Under the pieces are notes generated by a model that saw only the letters and a list, made by a program, of their open reading frames with translations, ran no database searches and was not told the origin of the DNA. Position numbers and translations under genes: made by a program. A stretch of 63,367 nucleotides of DNA, counting the filler, from Guillardia theta CCMP2712 (Eukaryota > Protista > Cryptophyta): NCBI RefSeq assembly GCF_000315625.1. It is 5 parts of 5 records of this genome, joined end to end, with 100 filler letters (N's around TTAATTAATTAA, not from the genome) between each part and the next. Parts side by side here need not be neighbours in the genome. Positions count along the whole stretch, not along the records: positions 1 to 25,423 come from NW_005434605.1; 4 more parts are not named here. One strand, given 5' to 3'. Within the stretch, counting starts at the first letter, position 1; the number at the start of each line of letters is the position of its first letter. Of the stretch, positions 7,389 to 20,018 are shown piece after piece.

Positions 7389-10023
7389 ATGTCTTTACAT
7401 GGCTGCCAGGAGGACAGCACGATCACAGCGTTGCTGAGCTCACCGAGGTCCTTGCTGGCATGCGAGAGGCAGGGTTACACCCCCGAGCAGCTGCTGTACC
7501 GAGGAGAAGAGGAGTTCCACGATGCGCAGGCCGGTAGAGAGGTCTCCTTCCTCCGGTTCGAGCATGCCGAGCTCGGGCGCCGGAGGAGGTTGAGGGAGGT
7601 GCTGAATGAGTACGACATGGTGTGCCGGGAGGACATGCGGGATGGCGACGATGTGAGGCACCAGGGGCTGCCGTCGAGCCTAATCCAGCTGAGCGCGAGG
7701 TCGTACGAGAAGGAGTTTGAGATCCTCAAGATGAAGCTGAGGGAGCAGATCGCGGACGTGATACGTGAGGACCTGAAGAAGGAGCTCGAGAGGAGCTCGC
7801 AGCACCATCATCCTCGTCCCTCCTCTCCAGCCAACGACAAGTCCAAGGGGCCCGCAGCTGGGGAGGGCAAGTCTGCCAAGTTCAAACCTCCTCCGCTGGT
7901 AAGGAAGCAGTCGGAGAACGCAGCGAGAATGCAGAGAGAGCGAGAAGAGCAGCAGAAGCGGAACATCCAGATAAAGGAGGAGCGAAGGCTGGCAGCTCTC
8001 GAGAGGAAGAAGCACGAGCTGCAGGAGGAGAACGAGAGGAAGCGGACTGAATTCCAGCTGAGGCTGTCCTCTGCGCAGGACGCGCTAAGGGACCACCAGA
8101 TGAAGCAGGAGATGATGCTGGACGAGAAGATGAAGAAGAACGAGGTACAAAGGAAGAAGTTCGAAGAGGAGCGGAGGGAGGAGATGGAGAAGAGGAAGCA
8201 CATCCTGCAGATACGGCAGGACCGAGTGCAGCAGGCGATCAGCGAGCTGGACAGCCGAGAGGAGGTAAAGATCAGCAAGCTGAAGCAGAAGGAGGAAGAG
8301 GCCGGGAAGCGCCTGCAGGCTCTCCGGCAGAACAGAGGCGCGAGCTCGGAGCAGAGGAGGAGGGAAGCGGAGTACAAGGAGCAGCGGCGGCAGGAGATAC
8401 TGATGAGGGCGGAGTATGACAAGGAGGCGCGGAAACAGCATCTGATAGAGAGGCAACTGCAGGATGAGATACAGATTCAGCATCAGAAGGAGAAGAAGGA
8501 AAGGGAGAGGAGGCTGCACGTGGAGTTGGAGAGGCAGCGGAAGCAGGAGAGGATGGAGGCGATCGAGCGGTACCGGCGCATGGAGGAGTACAAGAGGAAG
8601 CAGCAAGCAGAGAGGATCGATGAGGAGACTCGGGCGATCCAGCAGCGGAAGTCAGACATGAAGAGACTGCACGAGTTCATCCTGGCGGAGAAGCGAGAGA
8701 GGGAGCACCTGAAGAAGCTCATGGTCGACAGCGTCAGGCACTTCGCCGTGACGCGCGTGTGGAGCGTGCCAGAGGAGGTCAGCTCGGAGATCGACTACAA
8801 CGAGATCAAGTCCGCCATCCAGGAAGAGTTCTGGAGCCAGAGGACGGGATCGCATGCGCTGAGGGACCAGGAGAGCAGAGACGTTCTCAAGCCGGCTCCT
8901 CCTTCTACAGCGCCGGGGCATGCTCGTCAGGTCTTCGTTACCCAGGAAGCAGAAGGCTCGTGGAGCAGGGGGGATACTCGGGATCGCCTCGACCATCACC
9001 CGAGACTAGTCGACCCAAGGGAGGCACAGGGAAGGTATCTTCCTCCTGCTCCTGCTCCTCCCCTTGTGCAGCAGCAGAAGCAGCGCCCCAAGTCTGCTCA
9101 CGTCAGTTCGACTCGCGTGGTCCTGTCAAATTCAGGTCACCCACTCAATGGGATCGCTCCTCTTGCTCCGCATCCAGACCACAGGGAGATCGAGGAGGGG
9201 CGAGAGCGTGAGATAAGGTGCAGTCAAGAACAACTCTCCCTCCCTCCCTGCCTCCCTCCCTGCCTCCCTCCCTGCCTCCCTCCCTGCCTCCCTGCCTCCC
9301 TGCCTCCCTGCCTCCCTGCCTCCCTGCCTCCCTCCCTTCGAAGCTCTTCCATCCCTCTACCCACCCCATGTCTCGTACCATGATCTTCTGCTTCTGACAA
9401 GCGGAAGGAGTTTCAGGCAACCGGCGAAAAAGCTTCGAAAGAAGAAGAGGATCAAGAATGGGTTCGCGCAAACTCCGCTCCTGCCTGCTCCTATCATGCA
9501 TGTGGTCGAGAGCCTTCGAAAGTGAGCAGCCTGATCAGGAGGAGGAAGCAGGAGAAGAAAGCAGGAGGAGGAAGCAGGAGAAGAAAGCAGGAGGAGGAAG
9601 CAGGAGGAGGAAGCAGGAGAAGAAAGCAGGGGGAAGGGGGCAGACAGAGGAGAGGGAGGGTGTAGAGGGGAGGGAAGATGAGGAAGGAATGAAGGGAGTT
9701 ATGCTGACGGTGTTGGATCTCAGGATTCAGAACTTGGAGCTGACACGCATGATTCAACTGGAGGAGGTTTGGTGAGATTTGGTCGATCAACCTGATGCCT
9801 CGACAGGAGCAGGAGAAGCGGCGAGAGAAGATGTACGAGATGGCTGAAGATGAAGACAGGACGGTGAGACGAGACTGTCGAGTTGGAAAGAGCTGACAGT
9901 GGGTGGCAGGAGTTGAAGAGAATCTTTGAGAAGGAGAGGAGGAGAGGAGCTCAAGAGATTATGAAGATGACTGCCGCACACGAGGAGCATCTTGCTAATT
10001 TATTAACACAACATGTGCGATGA
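7389..10023 (+). CDS. Long coiled-coil protein, CCDC177/DUF4659-like (possible cilia/cytoskeleton component)
   Basis: N-terminal LSSPRSLLACERQGYTPEQLL...RFEHAELGRRRRL resembles the CCDC177 SPRSLEAC motif. E/R/K/Q-rich coiled coil. Spliced tail RIQNLELTRMIQLEE...IMKMTAAHEEHLANLLTQHVR*. Confidence 0.75.
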
Positions 10024-10866: not shown

Positions 10867-12202
10867 GTCGTTATGCTCAAATCTTGTGCAGCACTTGCCC
10901 TCCTACAGGGAAGGGGGAAGCCAGCTCAGGTAGATTGAGGCTAAAACAGCTCAAAAGATCTCCAGTTGCGGCTCTGAAAAAAAGCACCAGTAAGAGGCAA
11001 GACGTAGAGAAGCATTGCTCCTCTCTCCTCCTCATCCTCATCTAATCTAAATATTCGCAAAGCACAAGATGCTCCTATCTCCCCACCCTCATAAGTGGTC
11101 TACTCTTTCGGCGATGCCTCCTCATCATCCGCTCTTCTGCTCCATAATATGATCGCCGATGGTGTAGTGGCAAGAGGGTTCGACTAGTTACTGCTCGGCT
11201 TATCATCTAAAGTCACGATTGGCCTATCGTTTCCCTCTCACGATCACATCTCTTCATATCTTCCTCCTAAATTCAAAATGACGTACCTGAGCTCTAACAC
11301 ATCATCTCTATCCTGCCTTCTTGCATAGAACCAAAACAGCCATCGGCGAACGAGAATGCTATGTTGACCTTCTCCATCCAACACCATTCACTTTCATCAT
11401 CATCTTCCTCCTTAGCATCGCTATTCTGCCATCGGCGTCTCCCCTCATTCTCTTCATCTGCCATGATCTATGGCCACCTCCTCCTGCCAACGGTTTCATC
11501 AGCCGCAACTCCCGCCATAGCGTCTCCTCATCTATCTCGCTGGCCACCTCTACCCACCCCAGCTACCAAACTGTACCCCCACCTCCAACTTCTTCACCCC
11601 CTACCCCCAGAAAAACTCAAGACCCCCCTGACTTCGCAACAAAGTACCCCCTATTTGACGTTATGGACGATTGCTAACCCTGACAATATCACCCTTTACC
11701 CCCCTGATTGCCAGGTCAGACCCCCCTACCCTCAATGTCTCTACACCCCGAATACCCCACCCCTTCACATCTCGCAACCAACAAAATATTGATGACCTAC
11801 CATCCAAACACCCACCCCCTCTACTGGATTCACTAATGAATACCCCACCCACCAATAGCTATGAACATGAAATATACCCCATCTTTCTCACAAAAGGAGA
11901 CTCAAATACCCGGTCCGGAGAGACGTACCCCATCTGGTGTCGCAACTACAAAAGTACCCCACCACCTTGTTACACATGACCCCACCCTACCAGTCAAATT
12001 GTCGTTGTGACCCTCCCCCGAGATTCAAAAAAATGTCCCGCCAAACTCAAGGCTTATCTGGTCTGCCATCATCCGTTCCCTCCCTCAGTCCAAGATGCCG
12101 TCGGTACCAAGATGCCGGGCCCCGGGCCCCGGGAGCTCATACCGCACAAATTCAACTGCTCCCCGCACGCACCTGTCCCCGCACTGTCCCCGCTGCTCCC
12201 CG

Positions 12203-14705
12203 ATGCCGCCTATGATGGCGCAGGAGCTGGAGAGGTTGTCGAGCGACATGGTGAAGGCAAGGAAGGAAGAGAAGCTGCTCACGGAGCAGGGGAAGCAGCA
12301 GACCCTCACTTTCCTCGTCCAGGGACAGGAGGAGGCGCGCGTGCTCGCCCTGCGCGCCATCGTAGCTGCTCGCGCGTTCGATGGGAAGTTGGAAGGTGCA
12401 GGGAGCCTTAAAACAGTGTCGGAACATGGAGAGGGGGGAGAAGGAGAAGCAGCAGCAGCAGCAGCGGGAGAAGCTGAAGGTGACGAGGACACGATTGTGT
12501 TGAGAGACCTGAAGGTCGAGCTGCTCGAACACGCCATACACTATATGTACACGGGTAGCTTCGAGGTGGATGAAGGGAACGTGCATGATATGCTGAAACT
12601 TGGGAAGAGGATGAGCCTGCCCGGGGTCATCAACATATGCTCCTCCTTCCTCTCAGAACGCTGCAGCAGCTCGTCAGTGTGCAAGGCCCTTGCAAGCGCG
12701 GAGGCGAGCGAAGCAGCGGAGCTGAAGGAATTCTGTCTCAACTTCATGGACAGGAGCGCGAAGGACGTGCTGGGCGACCCCTCGTTCGTTGAGCTGCCGA
12801 AGGAAGTCCTGCAGGAGGTGCTGAGGAGGGACTCCCTCGAGGTGGAGGAGGTGGACTTGTTCGCAGCGGTGGTGAGGTGGGGGAAAAGGCAGGCCGAGAT
12901 TGTTGAGCAGGAGGCAAGGCGGATGGCGGAGGCTGCGGCAGAGGCAGCTCCTTCAGGGGAGGGCAACAACGAGGGGAATGAAGGAGGAGGAGGAGGAGGA
13001 GGAGGAGGAGGAGGAGGAGGAGGAGGGAAACGGGACAACCGTCCCTTCCTCGAGATCGCCCTCAGCGGGGTAATCGACCATGTTCGTTTCCCCCTCATAT
13101 CCCCTGCTGCCCTCCGGGACGTGGTCCAGCCTTCTCTGACGGTGGAGCACGAGGGGGAGAAGCGATGCGTCGCGGAGAGGTACGTGCTGGAAGGCTACCA
13201 GCACCATGCTCTCACCAAGATCGGGCAGCCCAGCAACGTGGAGGAGGAGAGGCGGCGGCCGAGGAAGAATCAGAGCTCGTCGCAGGCTGAGGTGAACAGG
13301 GAGGAAGAGGAGGAGGCAGGGAGGGTGGAAGAGGCGAGACGCCGGGCAGGCCGCACGGTGAGGTGGCTGGAGAATCTCCCACGGCAGGCGGCGCGGGTGA
13401 GCATGAGGGGGATGGGGCTGGGTTATGCGGATGCGGTGGTGACGGCAGAGCACGTGAAGAGGGGAGGGAGGAGCCTTGAGGAGATGGACCTGAAGAACAA
13501 CGACTTGGACCTGTCCTCCATGCAGGTGCTTCTCCCAGCGCTGGGAGGATGCAGCGGGCTCAAGGGGCTGGCTCTCGGGGACAACCCCATCTTCACTGTG
13601 AGGGCTCGACTGTCGAGGAGGTGAAGTACTGACGGCAGCGAGCAGAATATGGGGGAGAGAGATGTAGAGGTTGTACAAATGCTACTTGCCAACCTCAAGA
13701 CCGTCAAGCTTGAGAAGCTCGGGTTAGGGAGCACAGGGATGGACGATAAGAGCTTGAGGGGTCTGGTGGAAGTCCTTCCTAGCTTCAGGAGCCTCAAGGT
13801 CCATATCACTTCCTGCTCCCTCCTGTGGCAATACATAGTGACATGCTCCTCGTCCTCGTCCTCGTCCTCATCTTCCTCTTCTTCCTCGTCCTCGTCCTCG
13901 TCCTCATCTTCCTCTTCTTCCTCGTCCTCCTCCTCCTCCTCATCATCATCATCCGCTTTCTCCTCCTCCCACCTTCAATCCCTCCCTCCCCATTTCCTTT
14001 CTCCACCCTCGACCCTCTCCTCTTTGTTCCTATTCTCGTCTTTGTTCCCCTCCTCTTCTCCTTCCTCCTTTCCCTCTCTCTGCCTCCCTTCCATTTTCTG
14101 CCTCCTCTCTTCAGGTGTTGGGTCTCAGCGGAAATCGTCTGACCAGCGAAGGGGTCGAGTTTCTTCTTACACGCCTCCAGGTGACGTGGGGGAGGAGGAG
14201 GATGGAAATGATTCTACTGGCTGCAAGCACAAATTGAACTTGTTGCTGCAGAAACTGCGGGAGGAAGGAGCTTGTTTGAGTTTGCACACTCTTATCCTCC
14301 ATGACAACTCTATATCAGGTTGAAACCTCACCCTCTCCCCCCCACCCACCCATCCTCTCCTCCTCTTCCTCCCCTCCCCTCCCCTCCCCTCCTCTCCTCT
14401 CCTCTCCTTTCCCCTCCCCTCCTCTCCTCTCTCTCTCCTCTCCTCTCCTCTCCTTCCTGCTGCTCTACTCCAATCTCTACCACTTCATATTCTTCTCAGT
14501 ACTTATCCCCTATCGCAATCCTTGCCTTCCTTCCCCTTCCATCCACCTTAGCTCCTCGCTCCTCTCCTCTCCTCTTGCTTCTCAGTCTGCGAACTCCTTC
14601 CCCATATTTCCTTCTCCTGATCTCCTTTCCTCAGATGCGGAAGTTTCGAAGCTGCAATCTCTTTCACCAAAGGGAATGATCGTGCAGTTGAAATCCGATA
14701 GGTGA
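12203..14705 (+). CDS. BTB/POZ-BACK protein with C-terminal RNI-like leucine-rich repeats
   Basis: BTB (LALRAIVAAR...LLEHAIHYMYTG), BACK (FVELPKEVLQEVLRRDSLEVEEVDLFAAVVRW...HVRFPLI), LRRs (LEEMDLKNNDL, LKGLALGDNPI, LHTLILHDNSI). Last exon ends VQLKSDR*. The start could be 12095. Confidence 0.85.
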
Positions 14706-14989: not shown

Positions 14990-17900
14990 TAAGAAGCTCT
15001 GTAAATCTCTGGCATGAAAACGCGTCGGGGCTCTTGAAAGGCGGCAAGGGAGGGAAGAGGAGGAGCAATTTCAACTACCACACCCTCCGTCCTCCTCCCG
15101 TTCATGATCCTACTCGCCTGTTGCTATCAAAGAAGGTCAGAATCGAGCAAGAGAAGTCAGAGAGGAGGAGGNNNNNNNNNNNNNNNNNNNNNNNNNNNNN
15201 NNNNNNNNNNNNNNNNNNNNNNNNNNNNNNNNNNNNNNNNNNNNNNNNNNNNNNNNNNNNNNNNNNNNNNNACATTGAGAATCTTGCTTCCTCCTGCCTG
15301 CTCCTCCTCTGTTCCTCCTGCCTGCTCCTCCTCTCCTCCTCCTGCCTGCTCCTCCCCTCCTCCTCCTGCCTGCTCCTCCCCTCCTCCTCCTGCCTGCTCC
15401 TCCTCTCCTCCTCCCCTGGATCCCCGACGCTGCTCTTCGAAAGAGAAGTCCGCGGTGCGTTGGAGACGGCTGGAGGAGCGAACATGAGAGGAGAAGGCGA
15501 GCTGGACTGGAAGACGGATCGCCAGTAGGAGTCAGGAGGGTTGTAGTAGTGGTGAGGGAGGTCGAGCCAGAATGTTTTGAAGTTTCCTTTGCCACGGATT
15601 GAAACCATCCCGCGGCAGACCTGACGGGAAAGTGAAAGGAGGAAGCAAACAACAGAACCAGTGAGATGGAGGGAGGGAGGGAGGGAGGGGGGAGGGAGGG
15701 AGGGAGGGAGGGAGGGAGGGAGGGAGGGAGGGAGGGAGGGAGGGAGGGAGGGAGGGAGCTGAGATAGATAGGCGGGAGGAGGCAAGGGGGAGCGAGGGGT
15801 TTTTCATCTCCTACAATGAATGACGCGAACTCGTCGTTGGCCTCGGACAAGAGCTTCGTCCTCATCTCTGCCGACAACTGCTCCCCAACGTCAACGCAGC
15901 CCAGCTGCATAGCAGCAGGGGACCCACCTGAATCCTGTTGGGTCCCGAGGTGGCCGCGAGCTGGGAAGCAACGGTGATGGTTGAGCCGAAGAGACAGTAG
16001 CGCTGCGTTTGCTTCCTGTTGCCGACGACGCTCGCGACTACCGACCCCACATGGCAACCGATCCTCAGCATGAGCGTCTCCTGTGCCCGTCCCTGGTGGA
16101 GGAGGTGGTGAGGAAGGTGCAGGTGCAGAAGAGGATGATGGGTAGGAGGAGGGAGGGATGGAGGGAGGGATGGAGGGAAGAAGGAAGAGGAGAGGGAGAG
16201 GAGGAGAGAGGAAGAGCAGCGGGAGCGAGGGAACGATGAAGGGAGGAATGGACCTCTTCATCAAGGAGTATTTCGCGGGTTGACTGCAAGAGGGCGACGG
16301 CAAACTGGGCGACAGAGGCAGCGTTGCTGTGCTGCTCGTCGTAGAGGCCGGATGCGACCTAAGGGAAGAAGAGTCAGAGGAGGAAAGGAGGAAGAAGTTC
16401 GAACGAGGAGCGTGCAAAGAGACAGGATGTCGTGGTAGGGAGAGAGAACCATGGAGGGCTGCGAGGAAAAGGAGGACGAGCAGGGAGAGGGAAAGCTGGA
16501 TCAAGGGGAGGCAGCTTACCATGCAGGTCCCCCCGTTTGTGTGGATCCGAAAGACGCCATGGAGCTTGGAGAGGTTGTCTATCGTCTCGTAGAGTTTGCG
16601 CATGAGCTCCCGAAACTTTCAGCTGAGGGTCAGCTGGTAGGCAGGTGGGAAGGAGGGAGGGGACAGAACCTTCTGGCGAGGAAGCTCCCTGGTCAGCCTC
16701 TCCATGTTCACGACGTCGGCGAAGAGGACGGAGACGTTGGAGAACCTCTCAGGGTCGACCTTGATGCCATCCAAGACCATCTTGGCGATCTGAGCCGGAG
16801 GAGCGTCAGAGGGCGGGGAGGGGGGAAAGGGAGGGAGGGTGGGAAGGGAGGGAGGGGAGGAAAGACGAGACGAGAAGGAGGAAGTGTGGGAGGAGGACGG
16901 AGAGCCTCTCAATTCCTCCCTGTCACCTTAGGAGGGAAGGAGGGAGAAGGGTTGATGCTCTGATCGGACGAGTGGCCGCTGAAGGGAAAGCTCATCGAGT
17001 AAACTTTGTCCATCTGGAAACACAGCAGCATGGCGAGGAAGAGTCAGCACCCCAAAGACTTTCATCTCCTCGTCCGCGTCCTCGTCCTCGTCCTCGTCCT
17101 CGTCCACCTACTGCTGCGCCCCAGCCCCCCTTCAAATGAGAACCTCCTCCTCGTCCTCCTTCCCCTTCTGCACAAGATTCCAGTCCTCTCCCCTATCTAC
17201 CCAACCCCTCCCTCTGCGCTGTCCCAACTCTTCTCTTCCTCGTTGATTCTCCGCCCTCCTCACCATTCGGCTCATGAAATCTGGGTCGGACGTCAGGCTG
17301 TTGATCGCGGAGACGATGGAGGTGAAGGCTGGACGTCTCTGCGGGTCTTGACACCAGCAGTCCTGAATGAGATTGATCATCTCCTGAGGGACATTCGAAT
17401 AGTCCAGCTCCGGTCTCAGCACTCCGGTCTTCACACCCTGCATGACCTGCGTTGTGCGGTGAGGAGAACGAAGGAGGGGAAGGAGCGAAGGAGGGAGGGG
17501 AAGGGAGTAGTGAGGGAGGGAGAAGGTGAGGGAGGAGAAGCGGGAATGAAGAGGAAGGCAAGTGAATGTGATCAAGAGACAGACCTGGTAGATGTTGAGG
17601 TTGTTGTAGATGTTGTCGTTGAGAGGGTGGAAGATCTCGTACATGGTAATGGCGAAAGCGTAGACATCAGTGGCTGTGGACGCCCCTCGGCCATCCAACA
17701 GCTCAGGAGCATTCCAGAATATAGTCCCCACTCGCTCTCCCTCCTTCGATCGGGCAGAAGTCATCCCAAAGTCGGAAATCTGCAGCACAAGCTTCAGCCT
17801 CCCCCTTCATTGCTGTCCCTCTCCTCCCTTCACCTTCGGGGTCAGTTTGGCATCCACCAGGACGTTGGCAGCTTTCAGATCCTTGTGGATCAGGGGAGGG

Positions 17901-20018
17901 TTGGCCAGGTGGACATACTGCATGCCAGCCGCAATGCCTGCCAACAACGATATGAGAACAGGCGGAGCGGCGGCAGCAGAGGCAGCAAGGAGGACAGAGG
18001 GCAAGTGAGATATGGCAGGGCAGCGATCGGAGATCGGAGAGGACCAATGCAAGACATGTCACCTGAGATCAAATCCATCTGAATGTCGAACGTCATGGCA
18101 AACCGATTGTTCAACATGTCACGAATGCTGCCGTACTCGAAGTACTGCATCAGCAAGAACTCCTTGCCGTACTCGAAGCACGCTCCCATGATCGGGCACA
18201 AGTTGGGATGCCTCATCGAGATCATGACCTTGACCTCGGTCATCAGTTGCGACCGGATGCTCTTGTTCAGGCCCTGGCCCCGACCGATGAGCAGCTCCAT
18301 GAGCTGCGGCTGGTCCTGGTCCTTCATCCCTGTCCCCGAGTTCGACTTCGTCAGGTCGACCTCTCCGGAAGTTCCCCTAGCACTGATCCCGCTCGAGGTC
18401 GGCGAGGAGTGGCTCACCCTGTTAGCAAGGTTCGGCTGCCAGGCGACAGAGTTCATGGCTGACTTGAGCGGCATCTGGTTGAGCTTCAACGCTTCCGACG
18501 GCGAAACCAGCCGCTTACATGCCACCACTTGACTTCGAAAGTGAACCTTGAGAACAACCCCGAACGATCCTTGCCCGAGCACCTCAGGCTTCTCCGGAAA
18601 GCTTACTTCATCCCAGCTGACCTTCCACAAGTTCTCTTTGCGACTCTTGATGTATCCCACCAGGAAGAACACCCCGATGCAAACGAGCGCAAACCCTCCG
18701 AGCGAGATCAGCACAACAGTCCCCACGTTCCTCGCAGCCCACGAGGCCCCAACATCCTGCGAGTTGCACGGGCACAAGCTCTCGACCAAACTCATGTTGG
18801 GCGCCGGCCATGATGGGAGGTCACTGCACAAAAACAGCTGCGGGAGTGATTCGCACTGCTTCCCCTGCAGCAGAGCCAACGCGTTCGTCAGAGTCAACGT
18901 GCTTCCACTCGAGTGATTGCGAACAACCCTCGTGATCGGAGCCTTCGGGAGGTCTGCGTTCGGGTTCAACTTGACGATCATCTCGTTATCCCAACACGCG
19001 ACTTTCCCTTGCAAAACCTTATCCAGGAGCGAGGCGGTCATGTTCAGCTGAACACCGATGTCCAGGTGCGCTACGACAACTACAGGCGCTGCATAGATAG
19101 GGAGCAGCATAAATCTCGTGCGCTGCTCCAGGGAAAGCGACTGGGGCGCCACGTCCACCCCCGCAAAGTCGATGCTTGCACCCAACTCAGAGAAATTGAG
19201 CAAATCCCCTCCGTTGTAGTTCACCACCGTGCTCGGCTGCAAGTTGATGGTGTAGTAGTTGTTGAGCTTCGTGAAGAGAGGAGAGAGGAGAGTAGAGCCA
19301 TAGGCCACAATCTTGGTGGTGGTCTTTGAAGTCACAGGGAATGACATGTTGGCTACCTTCTTACCATTGCACGACAGCTCTGAGATCGATTCCAACACAT
19401 AGCTTCTGATCTGAGCCGGCATCTCAACATACCAGGCATCGTTTGCAATCTTCCTGGCTTCGCTGGAGGTAACAATCCAGATCATGTACTCCTGCAACAC
19501 CTTTACCCTCAGGCACTCCTCCACGGTAGCCACTTGGAAGTTGTAAGGGAGCAGCAGGTAGGCCATCCCAACCAAGGGCCATGCACCAGGGAATAGGGCA
19601 TGAGCAAAATCTGGACACCTGGACCTCGCAAACCCAGGACACCTCTCGTTGATAATCAGCTCAGGTTGCAACGAGGCATTCACGCTGTGCATGGTGGGGA
19701 GCATGAATCCACCGTCCAGCCCTTGTACCGCTACGATCTGCAAGTTCCTGTTGTAAGATCCATCAATATATGTCGGGTAGCCTGCATAGCCTATGGAGAA
19801 GAGATTATCCCTCAACCCCTCCAAGAGGGCATTGGTCGTTTCCTGCAGCAGGAGAACAAGTCAGCAGCGAGCGGGCATGGCGCCAACGAGGAAACAACCT
19901 TGCGGACAAACAGGTCGCACACGGGGAGCGTCCCTGACTGTCCTACAACAGGGAGAATGGAAATCTGCAGGAGCAGGAGCAGGAGCAGGAGCAGCATCCA
20001 GCCCCGCGCCTTCATCAT
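14990..20018 (-). CDS. Single-pass receptor: signal peptide, PstS-like ectodomain, TM, TKL protein kinase, class III guanylyl-cyclase-like domain
   Basis: Signal [26 protein letters not shown]. PstS motifs (YGSTL, DFAGVD, GKVACWDNEMIVKLNPNADLP, RNHSSGST, AWPLVGMAYLLL). TM VGTVVLISLGGFALVCIGVFFLVGYI. Kinase GQGSFG/VACK/HKDLKAAN/DFG/APE. Cyclase VSVLFADVV...RIGCHVGSVVASVVG...RYCLFG...RGKGNFKTFWL. The 3' end crosses an N gap and is approximate. Confidence 0.9.

What the first reader, a model, noticed from the sequence alone, without database searches (positions are those of the whole stretch)
18780..19898. Circularly permuted PstS phosphate-binding ectodomain on a receptor kinase
Seen: after the signal peptide and a 56-nt intron (19843-19898), the ectodomain starts with what is normally the C-terminal half of PstS (ETTNALLEGLRDNLFSIGYAGY ~ GNxGV...IGYVE; GGFMLPT; GAWPLVGMAYLLL ~ aYPI..tyll; YVEMP...VLESI). 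Only afterwards, from ~19311, comes the N-terminal half (IVAYGSTLLSPLF, VNY, DFAGVD, GKVACWDNEMIVKLNPNADLP, RNHSSGST), ending at WPAP just before the point where the first half began. The two halves sum to one domain in swapped order. Inference: it arose from a tandem PstS-PstS receptor that lost its outer halves; Cys residues at both new termini (PVCD, SLCPC) could staple it. Phosphate ligands are partly kept (equivalents of E. coli PstS T10, D56, R135, S139), but the GSSG motif is lost and D137 reads His, suggesting altered affinity or ligand. Candidate algal cell-surface phosphate/oxyanion sensor.
Basis: partly seen in the sequence, partly recalled or inferred. Interest (0 to 1): 0.85.

Follow-up and report, generated by a model that had tools for sequence, protein, structure and literature searches.

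The report
Circularly permuted PstS receptor ectodomain
A cryptophyte-alga gene encodes a cell-surface receptor whose outer domain is a bacterial-type phosphate-binding protein with its two halves in swapped order, making it a testable candidate for an extracellular phosphate or oxyanion sensor.

Summary
On the minus strand an expressed, spliced gene (11 GT..AG introns, including the 56-nt intron 19843-19898) encodes signal peptide, PstS C-part, linker, PstS N-part, Cys-rich stalk, TM helix, active-looking kinase and a degenerate class III cyclase domain.

- **Permutation.** Against a profile of 43 canonical PstS proteins, the C-part matches positions 203-353 (E 5e-22) and the N-part 29-182 (E 5e-33). 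The chain then runs on to the WP motif at about position 200, so the two pieces sum to one domain.
- **No missing half.** No other PstS-like piece lies in the window. Two paralogs carry the signal peptide and the C-part start in one exon.
- **Fold.** AlphaFold gives one compact fold (pLDDT 87, pTM 0.87). Folded as separate chains, the halves dock at ipSAE 0.84 against 0.00 for controls.
- **Family.** Three paralogs in this genome, an 83%-identical Hanusia phi ortholog, a Cryptomonas paramecium receptor and two metagenomic proteins share the order and form one clade.
- **Independent recurrence.** An actinobacterial PstS clade inside phoU-pstS-pstCA operons is permuted at the same loop.
- **Ligand.** Phosphate binding is unproven. 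This copy lacks the Ser38 loop and has D137H.

Verdict: a new variant of a known kind. I found no published report of it.

The parts
19899..20018 (-). Exon 1: start codon, signal peptide ([29 protein letters not shown]), conserved N-terminal Cys34, and the first residues of the PstS C-part
   Evidence: ORF and sequence. Transcript contigs reach about 19995 and depth is zero beyond 20076. Paralogs C305 and C12 have the signal peptide, the Cys and the C-part start in one exon.
19843..19898 (-). Intron 1, 56 nt, GT..AG
   Evidence: The spliced joint is seen in transcript contigs of three studies, X1, X2 and X4. Boundaries were checked.
19354..19842 (-). PstS C-part placed first (precursor aa 41-203, continuing from aa 37 in exon 1). 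It equals canonical PstS profile positions 203-353, includes the IGY strand, the WP..AYLLL strand and the C-terminal helices, and ends in the CNG motif.
   Evidence: hmmsearch with the canonical PstS profile, E 4.8e-22; weak phmmer match to solved PstS 289-346.
19327..19353 (-). Linker (aa 204-212) joining the old C-terminus to the old N-terminus
   Evidence: It lies between the two HMM stretches. It aligns colinearly with inter-unit linkers of tandem PstS proteins. AlphaFold models it with pLDDT about 87-96.
18799..19326 (-). PstS N-part placed second (aa 213-388), equal to profile 29 to about 201 and ending at WPAP. It carries all phosphate-ligand positions; the RNHSSGST loop lies at 18898-18921.
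   Evidence: hmmsearch E 4.9e-33; Pfam PF12849 at 38.3 bits; VIA-align to E. coli PstS residues 1-170, Z 8.8, rmsd 2.7 A; ligand columns.
18727..18798 (-). Juxtamembrane stalk with the conserved CPC motif (aa 389-412)
   Evidence: Sequence. CPC is conserved in the three paralogs.
18649..18726 (-). Single transmembrane helix (aa 413-438) followed by the basic stretch KSRK
   Evidence: Read directly from the sequence. The paralogs and P0050 are colinear here.
17264..18600 (-). Protein kinase domain across exons 2-5, with a roughly 90-aa insert. GxGxxG, VAxK, HxDLKxxN, DFG and APE are all present.
   Evidence: Pfam PF07714/PF00069 on the exons; motifs read in the spliced CDS; alignment to the paralog.
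15551..16789 (-). Class III cyclase homology domain across exons 7-12, degenerate. Compared with the canonical paralog, the second metal Asp is Gly and the catalytic Asn and Arg are Thr and Gln.
   Evidence: Pfam PF00211 at 49 bits on exon 15928-16092; alignment to paralog C305.

Best explanation
This is an expressed type I membrane receptor of a Guillardia/Hanusia-like cryptophyte. Its ectodomain is one complete PstS-type (class II periplasmic-binding-protein) fold in circularly permuted order. The chain starts in the loop after the conserved WP motif, at canonical profile position about 203. It runs through the old C-terminus, crosses a 9-residue linker into the old N-terminus, and ends at that same WP loop just before a Cys-rich stalk and the TM helix.

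Inferred mechanism. A small oxyanion, most likely phosphate or a close analogue, binds in the cleft formed by the N-part residues (T, D56, R135 and the S-G-S loop). Lobe closure is then relayed through the membrane-proximal new C-terminus to an active-type kinase. In sister paralogs it would also reach a canonical guanylate-type cyclase. In this copy the cyclase domain is catalytically degenerate and probably serves only for dimerisation or heterodimerisation.

The permuted gene most likely arose by duplication and deletion from the tandem PstS proteins common in protists.

Shown here: sequence order, complementarity, splicing and expression, family conservation, and predicted fold assembly. 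Inferred: ligand, signalling, and origin.
For: - Order and complementarity of the halves.
- Gene model: spliced transcripts from three studies including the 56-nt intron; an open CDS of more than 1112 aa; no other PstS-like segment in the window; the signal peptide directly precedes the C-part in paralogs C305 and C12.
- Fold: AlphaFold2 pLDDT 87.1, pTM 0.87. VIA-align gives Z 15.9 over 208 of 257 residues of the short PstS 4h1x, and Z 8.8 for model 175-347 against E. coli PstS 1-170. The atlas search gives TM 0.79 by target to the PstS2 family.
- Halves folded as separate chains: ipSAE 0.84 against a best control of 0.00. That mark was reached by 58 of 80 solved complexes and 2 of 110 mismatched pairs. 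The runs agree in at least 93% of contacts and the partner pLDDT is at least 82.
- Conservation: three paralogs share the order. The Hanusia phi ortholog is 83% identical and has the same odd ligand loop. Cryptomonas paramecium P0050 has the same C-N-TM-kinase-cyclase architecture. All seven eukaryotic permuted domains form one clade, SH-aLRT 99.
- Viability of this cut site: an independent actinobacterial clade is permuted at the same loop inside pst operons.
- Ligand positions are partly kept.
Against: - There is no experimental structure. The predictors know the PstS fold and may assemble the halves from memory.
- I could not run a permutation-aware superposition because no coordinates were available.
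- This copy has the most divergent binding site of the family: the G37/S38 loop is deleted, D137 is His, and an N-x-S sequon (N349-H-S) sits in the ligand loop. Phosphate binding is therefore uncertain.
- The cyclase domain lacks catalytic residues.
- Transcript contigs stop in the poly-Leu repeat near 19995, so the true 5' end is not seen. The one raw RNA run gave almost no coverage.
- The 3' end of the CDS runs into an assembly gap.
Confidence: 0.8

Rival explanations
1. The fold is a real permuted PstS domain, but the ligand is not phosphate. It could be another anion or small molecule, or the domain could have become a ligand-free scaffold or dimerisation module.
For: The Ser38 loop is deleted, D137 is His and T141 is Ser. 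A glycosylation sequon lies in the binding loop. All of these are conserved in the Hanusia ortholog, so the altered site is selected rather than decaying. This copy has the longest branch in its clade.
Against: T10, D56 (the residue that selects protonated phosphate over sulfate in E. coli PstS; my own knowledge), R135, S139 and G140 are kept. Solved D137 mutants of E. coli PstS are phosphate complexes (titles). The paralogs keep the GS38 motif.
Confidence: 0.4
2. The two pieces are leftovers of two different decayed PstS units of a tandem protein and do not form one domain. Alternatively, they complete their folds only between chains, as a domain-swapped dimer.
For: Most eukaryotic relatives are tandem PstS proteins. 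Some receptors, for example the Plasmodiophora P0021, show a full unit plus a lone N-part.
Against: The boundaries are exactly complementary. The single-chain model is confident, with a well-modelled linker. The halves dock with about 340 contacts while the controls score 0.00. The order is conserved across cryptophytes. The same permutation functions in a bacterial pst operon.
Confidence: 0.07
3. This is a gene-model or assembly artefact: a canonical N-half exon lies upstream, or the locus is mis-assembled.
For: The transcript contigs end in the CTG/poly-Leu repeat, so the 5' end is not directly seen.
Against: The signal peptide starts at a good ATG and no transcript depth is seen upstream of 20076. 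No PstS-like sequence occurs in 5.4 kb upstream or anywhere else in the window. Identical spliced contigs come from three studies. Two paralogs encode the signal peptide and the C-part start in a single exon.
Confidence: 0.03

Closest known systems
Bacterial phosphate-binding protein PstS (Pfam PF12849 PBP_like_2; NCBIfam TIGR00975; e.g. E. coli 1IXH)
   Same: Both halves are homologous over the whole domain. The predicted fold is a two-lobed class II PBP. Ligand positions T10, D56, R135, S139 and G140 are kept.
   Different: The order is permuted (profile 203-353, then 29 to about 201). The domain is tethered to a TM helix in a eukaryotic receptor rather than being a free or lipid-anchored partner of PstCAB. 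The Ser38 loop is missing and D137 is His. It scores below the TIGR00975 cut-off (87 against 205 bits).
Animal membrane guanylyl cyclase receptors (NPR-A/GC-A type: ANF_receptor, TM, kinase-homology domain, cyclase); comparison from my own knowledge
   Same: Overall logic: an extracellular periplasmic-binding-protein-like sensor, one TM helix, a kinase-like domain and a class III cyclase domain.
   Different: The sensor is a class II PstS fold, permuted, not a class I ANF_receptor domain. The kinase keeps all catalytic motifs rather than being a pseudokinase. In this copy the cyclase is the degenerate part, although paralog C305 is canonical.
Known natural circular permutations among class II binding proteins (glycine-betaine-binding OpuAC/ProX, ModA, CysB; Lo and Lyu 2008, PMC2395249)
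   Same: A natural circular permutation within the same structural superfamily that keeps the binding cleft.
   Different: A different family with a different cut site. Those relations were detected only structurally, at under 24% identity. Here both the permuted and unpermuted forms are recognisable by sequence. I found no report for PstS.
Eukaryotic tandem PstS proteins (e.g. Chromosphaera perkinsii P0001 with 4 units; Rhabdomonas costata P0005; Euglena gracilis P0011; own-genome genes on C71 and C132)
   Same: These are the closest sequence relatives. The query aligns colinearly over their C-part, linker and next N-part junction, including the CNG motif.
   Different: They have complete units in N-C-N-C order. 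The window protein has exactly one unit's worth of sequence, starting and ending mid-unit.
Actinobacterial permuted PstS clade found here (P0121, P0155-P0181; MAG loci L016, L017)
   Same: The same cut loop (profile 201|202) and the same C-then-N order. The predicted fold is compact (pTM 0.83), with the same order of secondary-structure elements.
   Different: Independent origin: 81% and 64% identical to canonical actinobacterial PstS in the two halves, against 27% and 15% to the window protein. It is a lipoprotein in a phoU-pstS-pstCA operon with a fully canonical ligand site.

Membership tests
PstS / PBP_like_2 (PF12849) | Sequence match above the Pfam gathering score | tested here: met
   38.3 bits against a cut-off of 27. 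Only the N-part is matched, profile 56-159.
PstS equivalog (TIGR00975) | Score above the curated equivalog cut-off (205 bits) | tested here: not met
   87.3 bits in two stretches. It is a homolog, not an equivalog.
PstS / class II PBP | Canonical colinear N-to-C order of the domain | tested here: not met
   Profile 203-353 precedes 29-182. Solved PstS 289-346 precedes 44-193.
PstS / class II PBP | Complete two-lobed fold | tested here: met
   By prediction only. pLDDT 87 and pTM 0.87; Z 15.9 to 4h1x over 208 of 257 residues; halves dock at ipSAE 0.84 against 0.00 for the best control.
PstS (phosphate-specific) | Phosphate-ligand residues (E. coli T10, F11 NH, S38, D56, R135, S139, G140, T141) | tested here: inconclusive
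   T10, D56, R135, S139 and G140 are kept. F11 is Leu (backbone donor), T141 is Ser, and the S38 loop is deleted. D137 is His.
PstS (ABC transporter partner) | Works with PstCAB permease genes | tested here: not met
   This is a eukaryotic single-gene receptor fused to a TM helix, kinase and cyclase domain. I did not search the genome for PstC or PstA.
Circular permutant (general definition) | Two segments homologous to the two parts of the parent in swapped order, complementary and bounded by true termini | tested here: met
   Complementary profile ranges. The signal peptide lies upstream and the TM helix downstream. Transcripts support the model. No extra PstS pieces are present.
Receptor guanylyl cyclase (animal type) | ANF_receptor (class I PBP) ectodomain | tested here: not met
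   Pfam finds PBP_like_2 only.
Receptor guanylyl cyclase (animal type) | Kinase-like domain followed by a class III cyclase domain | tested here: met
   PF07714 and PF00211 hit the exons of this gene and the paralog. The alignment is colinear.
Class III nucleotide cyclase (active enzyme) | Two metal-binding Asp residues plus the catalytic Asn and Arg | tested here: not met
   The GD of the paralog's IGDAYM motif reads GG here, and the catalytic Asn and Arg of its GDTVNTASRMES motif read Thr and Gln here, in alignment to paralog C305.
Eukaryotic protein kinase (active) | GxGxxG, VAxK, alpha-C Glu, HxD..N, DFG, APE | tested here: met
   All motifs are read in the spliced CDS. Pfam hits the exons. 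Activity itself was not tested.

The most novel reading that the evidence does not exclude
Cryptophytes possess a family of genuine cell-surface phosphate receptors. A permuted PstS ectodomain would couple external phosphate directly to kinase and cGMP signalling. The same loop of the PstS fold has been used independently for circular permutation in Actinobacteria, which would mark it as a preferred re-termination site of this fold.
Probability: 0.3. Interest if true: 0.8.

Novelty: new variant of a known kind. Interest (0 to 1): 0.66.

Why it matters
- **Extracellular phosphate sensing.** How eukaryotic cells sense phosphate outside the cell is poorly understood. A receptor that fuses a recognisable high-affinity phosphate-binding fold to a kinase and a cyclase gives a concrete candidate. 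It can be tested in a culturable alga and in vitro.
- **Protein evolution.** This is a sequence-detectable natural circular permutation for which likely intermediates (tandem PstS proteins) still exist. An independent bacterial recurrence at the same loop is found inside working pst operons. That makes PstS a good system for studying how permutation arises and what it does to hinge dynamics.
- **Sensor engineering.** The natural cut site suggests where PstS-based biosensors can be re-terminated or tethered.

Tried and rejected
- Pfam alone sees only the N-part. Solved-structure phmmer sees the C-part only weakly. A custom profile of close canonical homologs was needed.
- Foldseek and VIA-align are sequential, so E. 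coli-type PstS chains align over only one half. They cannot test the permutation directly, and I had no model coordinates for CE-CP or TM-align -cp.
- The raw RNA-seq run X19 gave almost no reads on the gene apart from a low-complexity pile-up at 17070-17236. Expression therefore rests on transcript contigs, which cannot show the 5' end or expression level.
- An AU test forcing all permuted domains (eukaryotic plus bacterial) into one clade did not finish in three 5-minute runs. Independent origin is argued from the tree and pairwise identities.
- Six literature searches found no report of permuted PstS or of PstS-ectodomain receptor kinases or cyclases. Absence from this library is not proof of novelty.
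- The Cys-staple idea could not be tested. Exon 1 residues were not in the model and the C-terminal tail has low pLDDT.
- Naming the organism as a Guillardia/Hanusia-like cryptophyte rests on one 83%-identical Hanusia phi protein.

Full report
**What is there.** The finding lies on the minus strand. Reading 20018 downwards gives an ATG and a classic signal peptide ([29 protein letters not shown]), then a GT..AG intron of 56 nt (19843-19898). A 1780-nt exon follows, encoding the whole ectodomain, a transmembrane helix and the first part of a kinase.

Transcript contigs from three independent studies are spliced exactly at this intron and at ten more GT..AG introns downstream. They reach about 19995, inside the CTG/poly-Leu repeat, and show no depth beyond 20076. 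Joining the exons gives an open frame of more than 1112 codons that runs into an assembly gap near 15300.

**The observation.**
- phmmer against solved structures matched ectodomain residues 177-325 to PstS 44-193 (E about 1e-8). It weakly matched residues 86-150 to PstS 289-346.
- TIGR00975 hit in two stretches. Pfam saw only the N-part.
- To get statistics for both halves I built a profile from 43 canonical single-domain PstS proteins found in the exhaustive protein search.
- Against it, precursor residues 37-203 match profile 203-353 (E 4.8e-22) and residues 213-364 match profile 29-182 (E 4.9e-33).
- The chain then continues to W385-P386, the conserved WP at profile about 199-200. This is aligned by eye here and by the HMM in the sister protein P0050.

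The first piece therefore begins where the second ends, and together they make exactly one domain. A six-frame scan of the whole window found no further PstS-like segment.

**Not a gene-model artefact.** The genome (87 Mb, 669 contigs) holds three paralogs, on contigs C54, C305 and C12. Each has the same order: C-part end, CNG linker, N-part, WP, CPC, TM, kinase. In C305 and C12 the signal peptide, a conserved Cys and the start of the C-part (…NPYSIGYQGY) lie in one exon. The same genome also has canonical colinear PstS genes (C130, C11) and tandem ones (C71, C132).

**Fold.**
- AlphaFold2 with a 47-row alignment gives one compact model: pLDDT 87.1, pTM 0.87, with a confident linker.
- Sequential aligners can match only half of a permuted protein to an E. 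coli-type PstS. Model 175-347 superposes on E. coli PstS 1-170 with Z 8.8 and rmsd 2.7 A.
- Because the two PBP lobes are pseudo-symmetric, the model also superposes over residues 1-290 on a whole short PstS: 4h1x, Z 15.9, 208 of 257 residues. The atlas search gives TM 0.79 by target to the PstS2 family. This is what a complete two-lobed fold predicts.
- Folded as two separate chains, the halves dock with ipSAE 0.84 against a best control of 0.00. That mark was reached by 58 of 80 solved complexes and 2 of 110 mismatched pairs. The runs agree in at least 93% of contacts and the partner pLDDT is at least 82. There are about 340 contacts, including pairing of the IGY and AYLLL strands with the long crossover strand of the N-part.

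These are predictions, not measurements. I could not run a permutation-aware superposition.

**Family and origin.** The exhaustive search returned 1416 relatives. They fall into three groups:
- canonical PstS proteins, which hit the query as N then C;
- many long protist proteins that are tandem PstS arrays, on which the query aligns colinearly across a unit junction;
- a few proteins with C then N only.

The third group contains:
- P0050, from Cryptomonas paramecium, with the same C-N-TM-kinase-cyclase architecture;
- P0049, with a signal peptide, the permuted domain and Ephrin_rec_like repeats;
- P0012, a metagenomic fragment;
- P0274, a Hanusia phi ortholog that is 83% identical and keeps the unusual ligand loop. 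This places the window genome among Guillardia/Hanusia-like cryptophytes.

I re-ordered all units into canonical order and built a tree. The four own copies form a clade (SH-aLRT 98). With P0049, P0012 and P0050 they form a clade of seven (SH-aLRT 99). A single eukaryotic origin from a tandem ancestor by loss of the outer halves is therefore plausible. It is not demonstrated.

**Independent recurrence.** P0121 and about 30 related clusters from uncultured Actinomycetes are lipoproteins that read profile 202-348 and then 30-201, followed by a stop. In MAG locus L016 the gene sits between phoU and pstC/pstA and scores 295 bits on TIGR00975. Its halves are 81% and 64% identical to canonical actinobacterial PstS, against 27% and 15% to the window protein. 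It branches beside those canonical proteins. AlphaFold gives pTM 0.83 with the same order of secondary-structure elements. The same loop was therefore used twice, which argues that this cut is structurally tolerated.

**Function.** All phosphate ligands of E. coli PstS lie in the N-part (my own knowledge of the 1IXH site). The table below gives the state of each position; "–" means no difference was noted.

| E. coli position | This copy | Three paralogs |
|---|---|---|
| T10 | kept | – |
| F11 | Leu | – |
| G37/S38 loop | deleted | keep GS38 |
| D56 | kept | – |
| R135 | kept | – |
| D137 | His | Gly |
| S139, G140 | kept | – |
| T141 | Ser | – |

- Solved D137 mutants of E. coli PstS are phosphate complexes (entry titles).
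- An N-x-S sequon (N349) lies in the ligand loop.
- The kinase keeps every catalytic motif.
- The cyclase domain is canonical in paralog C305. In this copy it has lost the second metal Asp and the catalytic Asn and Arg.

My reading is an oxyanion-gated receptor kinase. I put about 0.4-0.5 on phosphate itself for this copy, and higher for the paralogs. Its cyclase domain has probably become a dimerisation module.

**Comparison and novelty.** The protein works like an animal membrane guanylyl cyclase in layout, but with a class II, permuted sensor and an active-type kinase. Circular permutation is known among other class II binding proteins such as OpuAC/ProX, ModA and CysB (PMC2395249). I found no report of it for PstS, nor of PstS-ectodomain receptors. 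I rate it a new variant of a known kind, interest 0.66.

Noticed in passing
L012:1233-2333; L016:2896-4104; L017:3001-4089; proteins P0121, P0155-P0181: A clade of uncultured Actinomycetes encodes a circularly permuted PstS lipoprotein (C-part, then N-part, with the stop right after WPS). It sits between phoU and pstC/pstA, is cut at the same loop as the cryptophyte receptors, and arose independently of them.
   Followed up: yes
window:15551-16789 (-): The cyclase homology domain of this copy has lost the second metal Asp and the catalytic Asn and Arg. Paralog C305 (L008:3708-6332) is fully canonical and of the guanylate type, so a pseudo-cyclase or a heterodimer partner is possible.
   Followed up: partly
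P0021 / P0154 (Plasmodiophora brassicae CEO97692.1, SPQ98236.1): A class C GPCR (7tm_3) whose ectodomain is a PstS unit plus a second N-part, instead of the usual ANF_receptor domain. This is another eukaryotic receptor built on PstS.
   Followed up: no
P0049 (ENA metagenome, 730 aa): A permuted PstS domain behind a signal peptide, followed by Ephrin_rec_like / TNFR-like Cys-rich repeats rather than a kinase. The permuted module is therefore combined with other stalks.
   Followed up: partly
L010 (G000:C71:249000-258999) and L097 (G000:C132:167500-171500): Two near-identical own-genome genes carry a canonical PstS unit followed by a very divergent second PstS-like unit. By eye from the translation, the C71 gene's long frame ends in a hydrophobic, possibly multi-pass, tail. 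Pfam finds nothing in that long frame.
   Followed up: partly
window:18898-18921 (-): The ligand loop reads RNHSSGST, which creates an N-x-S glycosylation sequon at the position next to R135. It is conserved in the Hanusia phi ortholog. A glycan there would sit in the binding cleft.
   Followed up: no
window:17070-17236: Reads and contigs pile up very deeply (up to about 66,000x word depth) inside the 250-nt intron 17014-17263. The stretch codes an acidic Asp/Glu low-complexity repeat on the minus strand, so this is most likely cross-mapping of repeats and not a feature of the gene.
   Followed up: partly
window: about 15100-15300: A run of N (assembly gap) interrupts the 3' end of the CDS inside a repetitive EEERRSRQ tail. 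The stop codon of the receptor gene was not located.
   Followed up: no
window:10105-10866 (-), 12095-13624 (+), 7389-9383 (+): Neighbouring ORFs look unrelated by eye from their translations (no domain search was run): a secreted protein with a sequence reminiscent of an AMPK-beta/CBM48 motif, a large protein followed by LRR-like sequence, and a long coiled-coil protein. No phosphate-related neighbours were seen.
   Followed up: no
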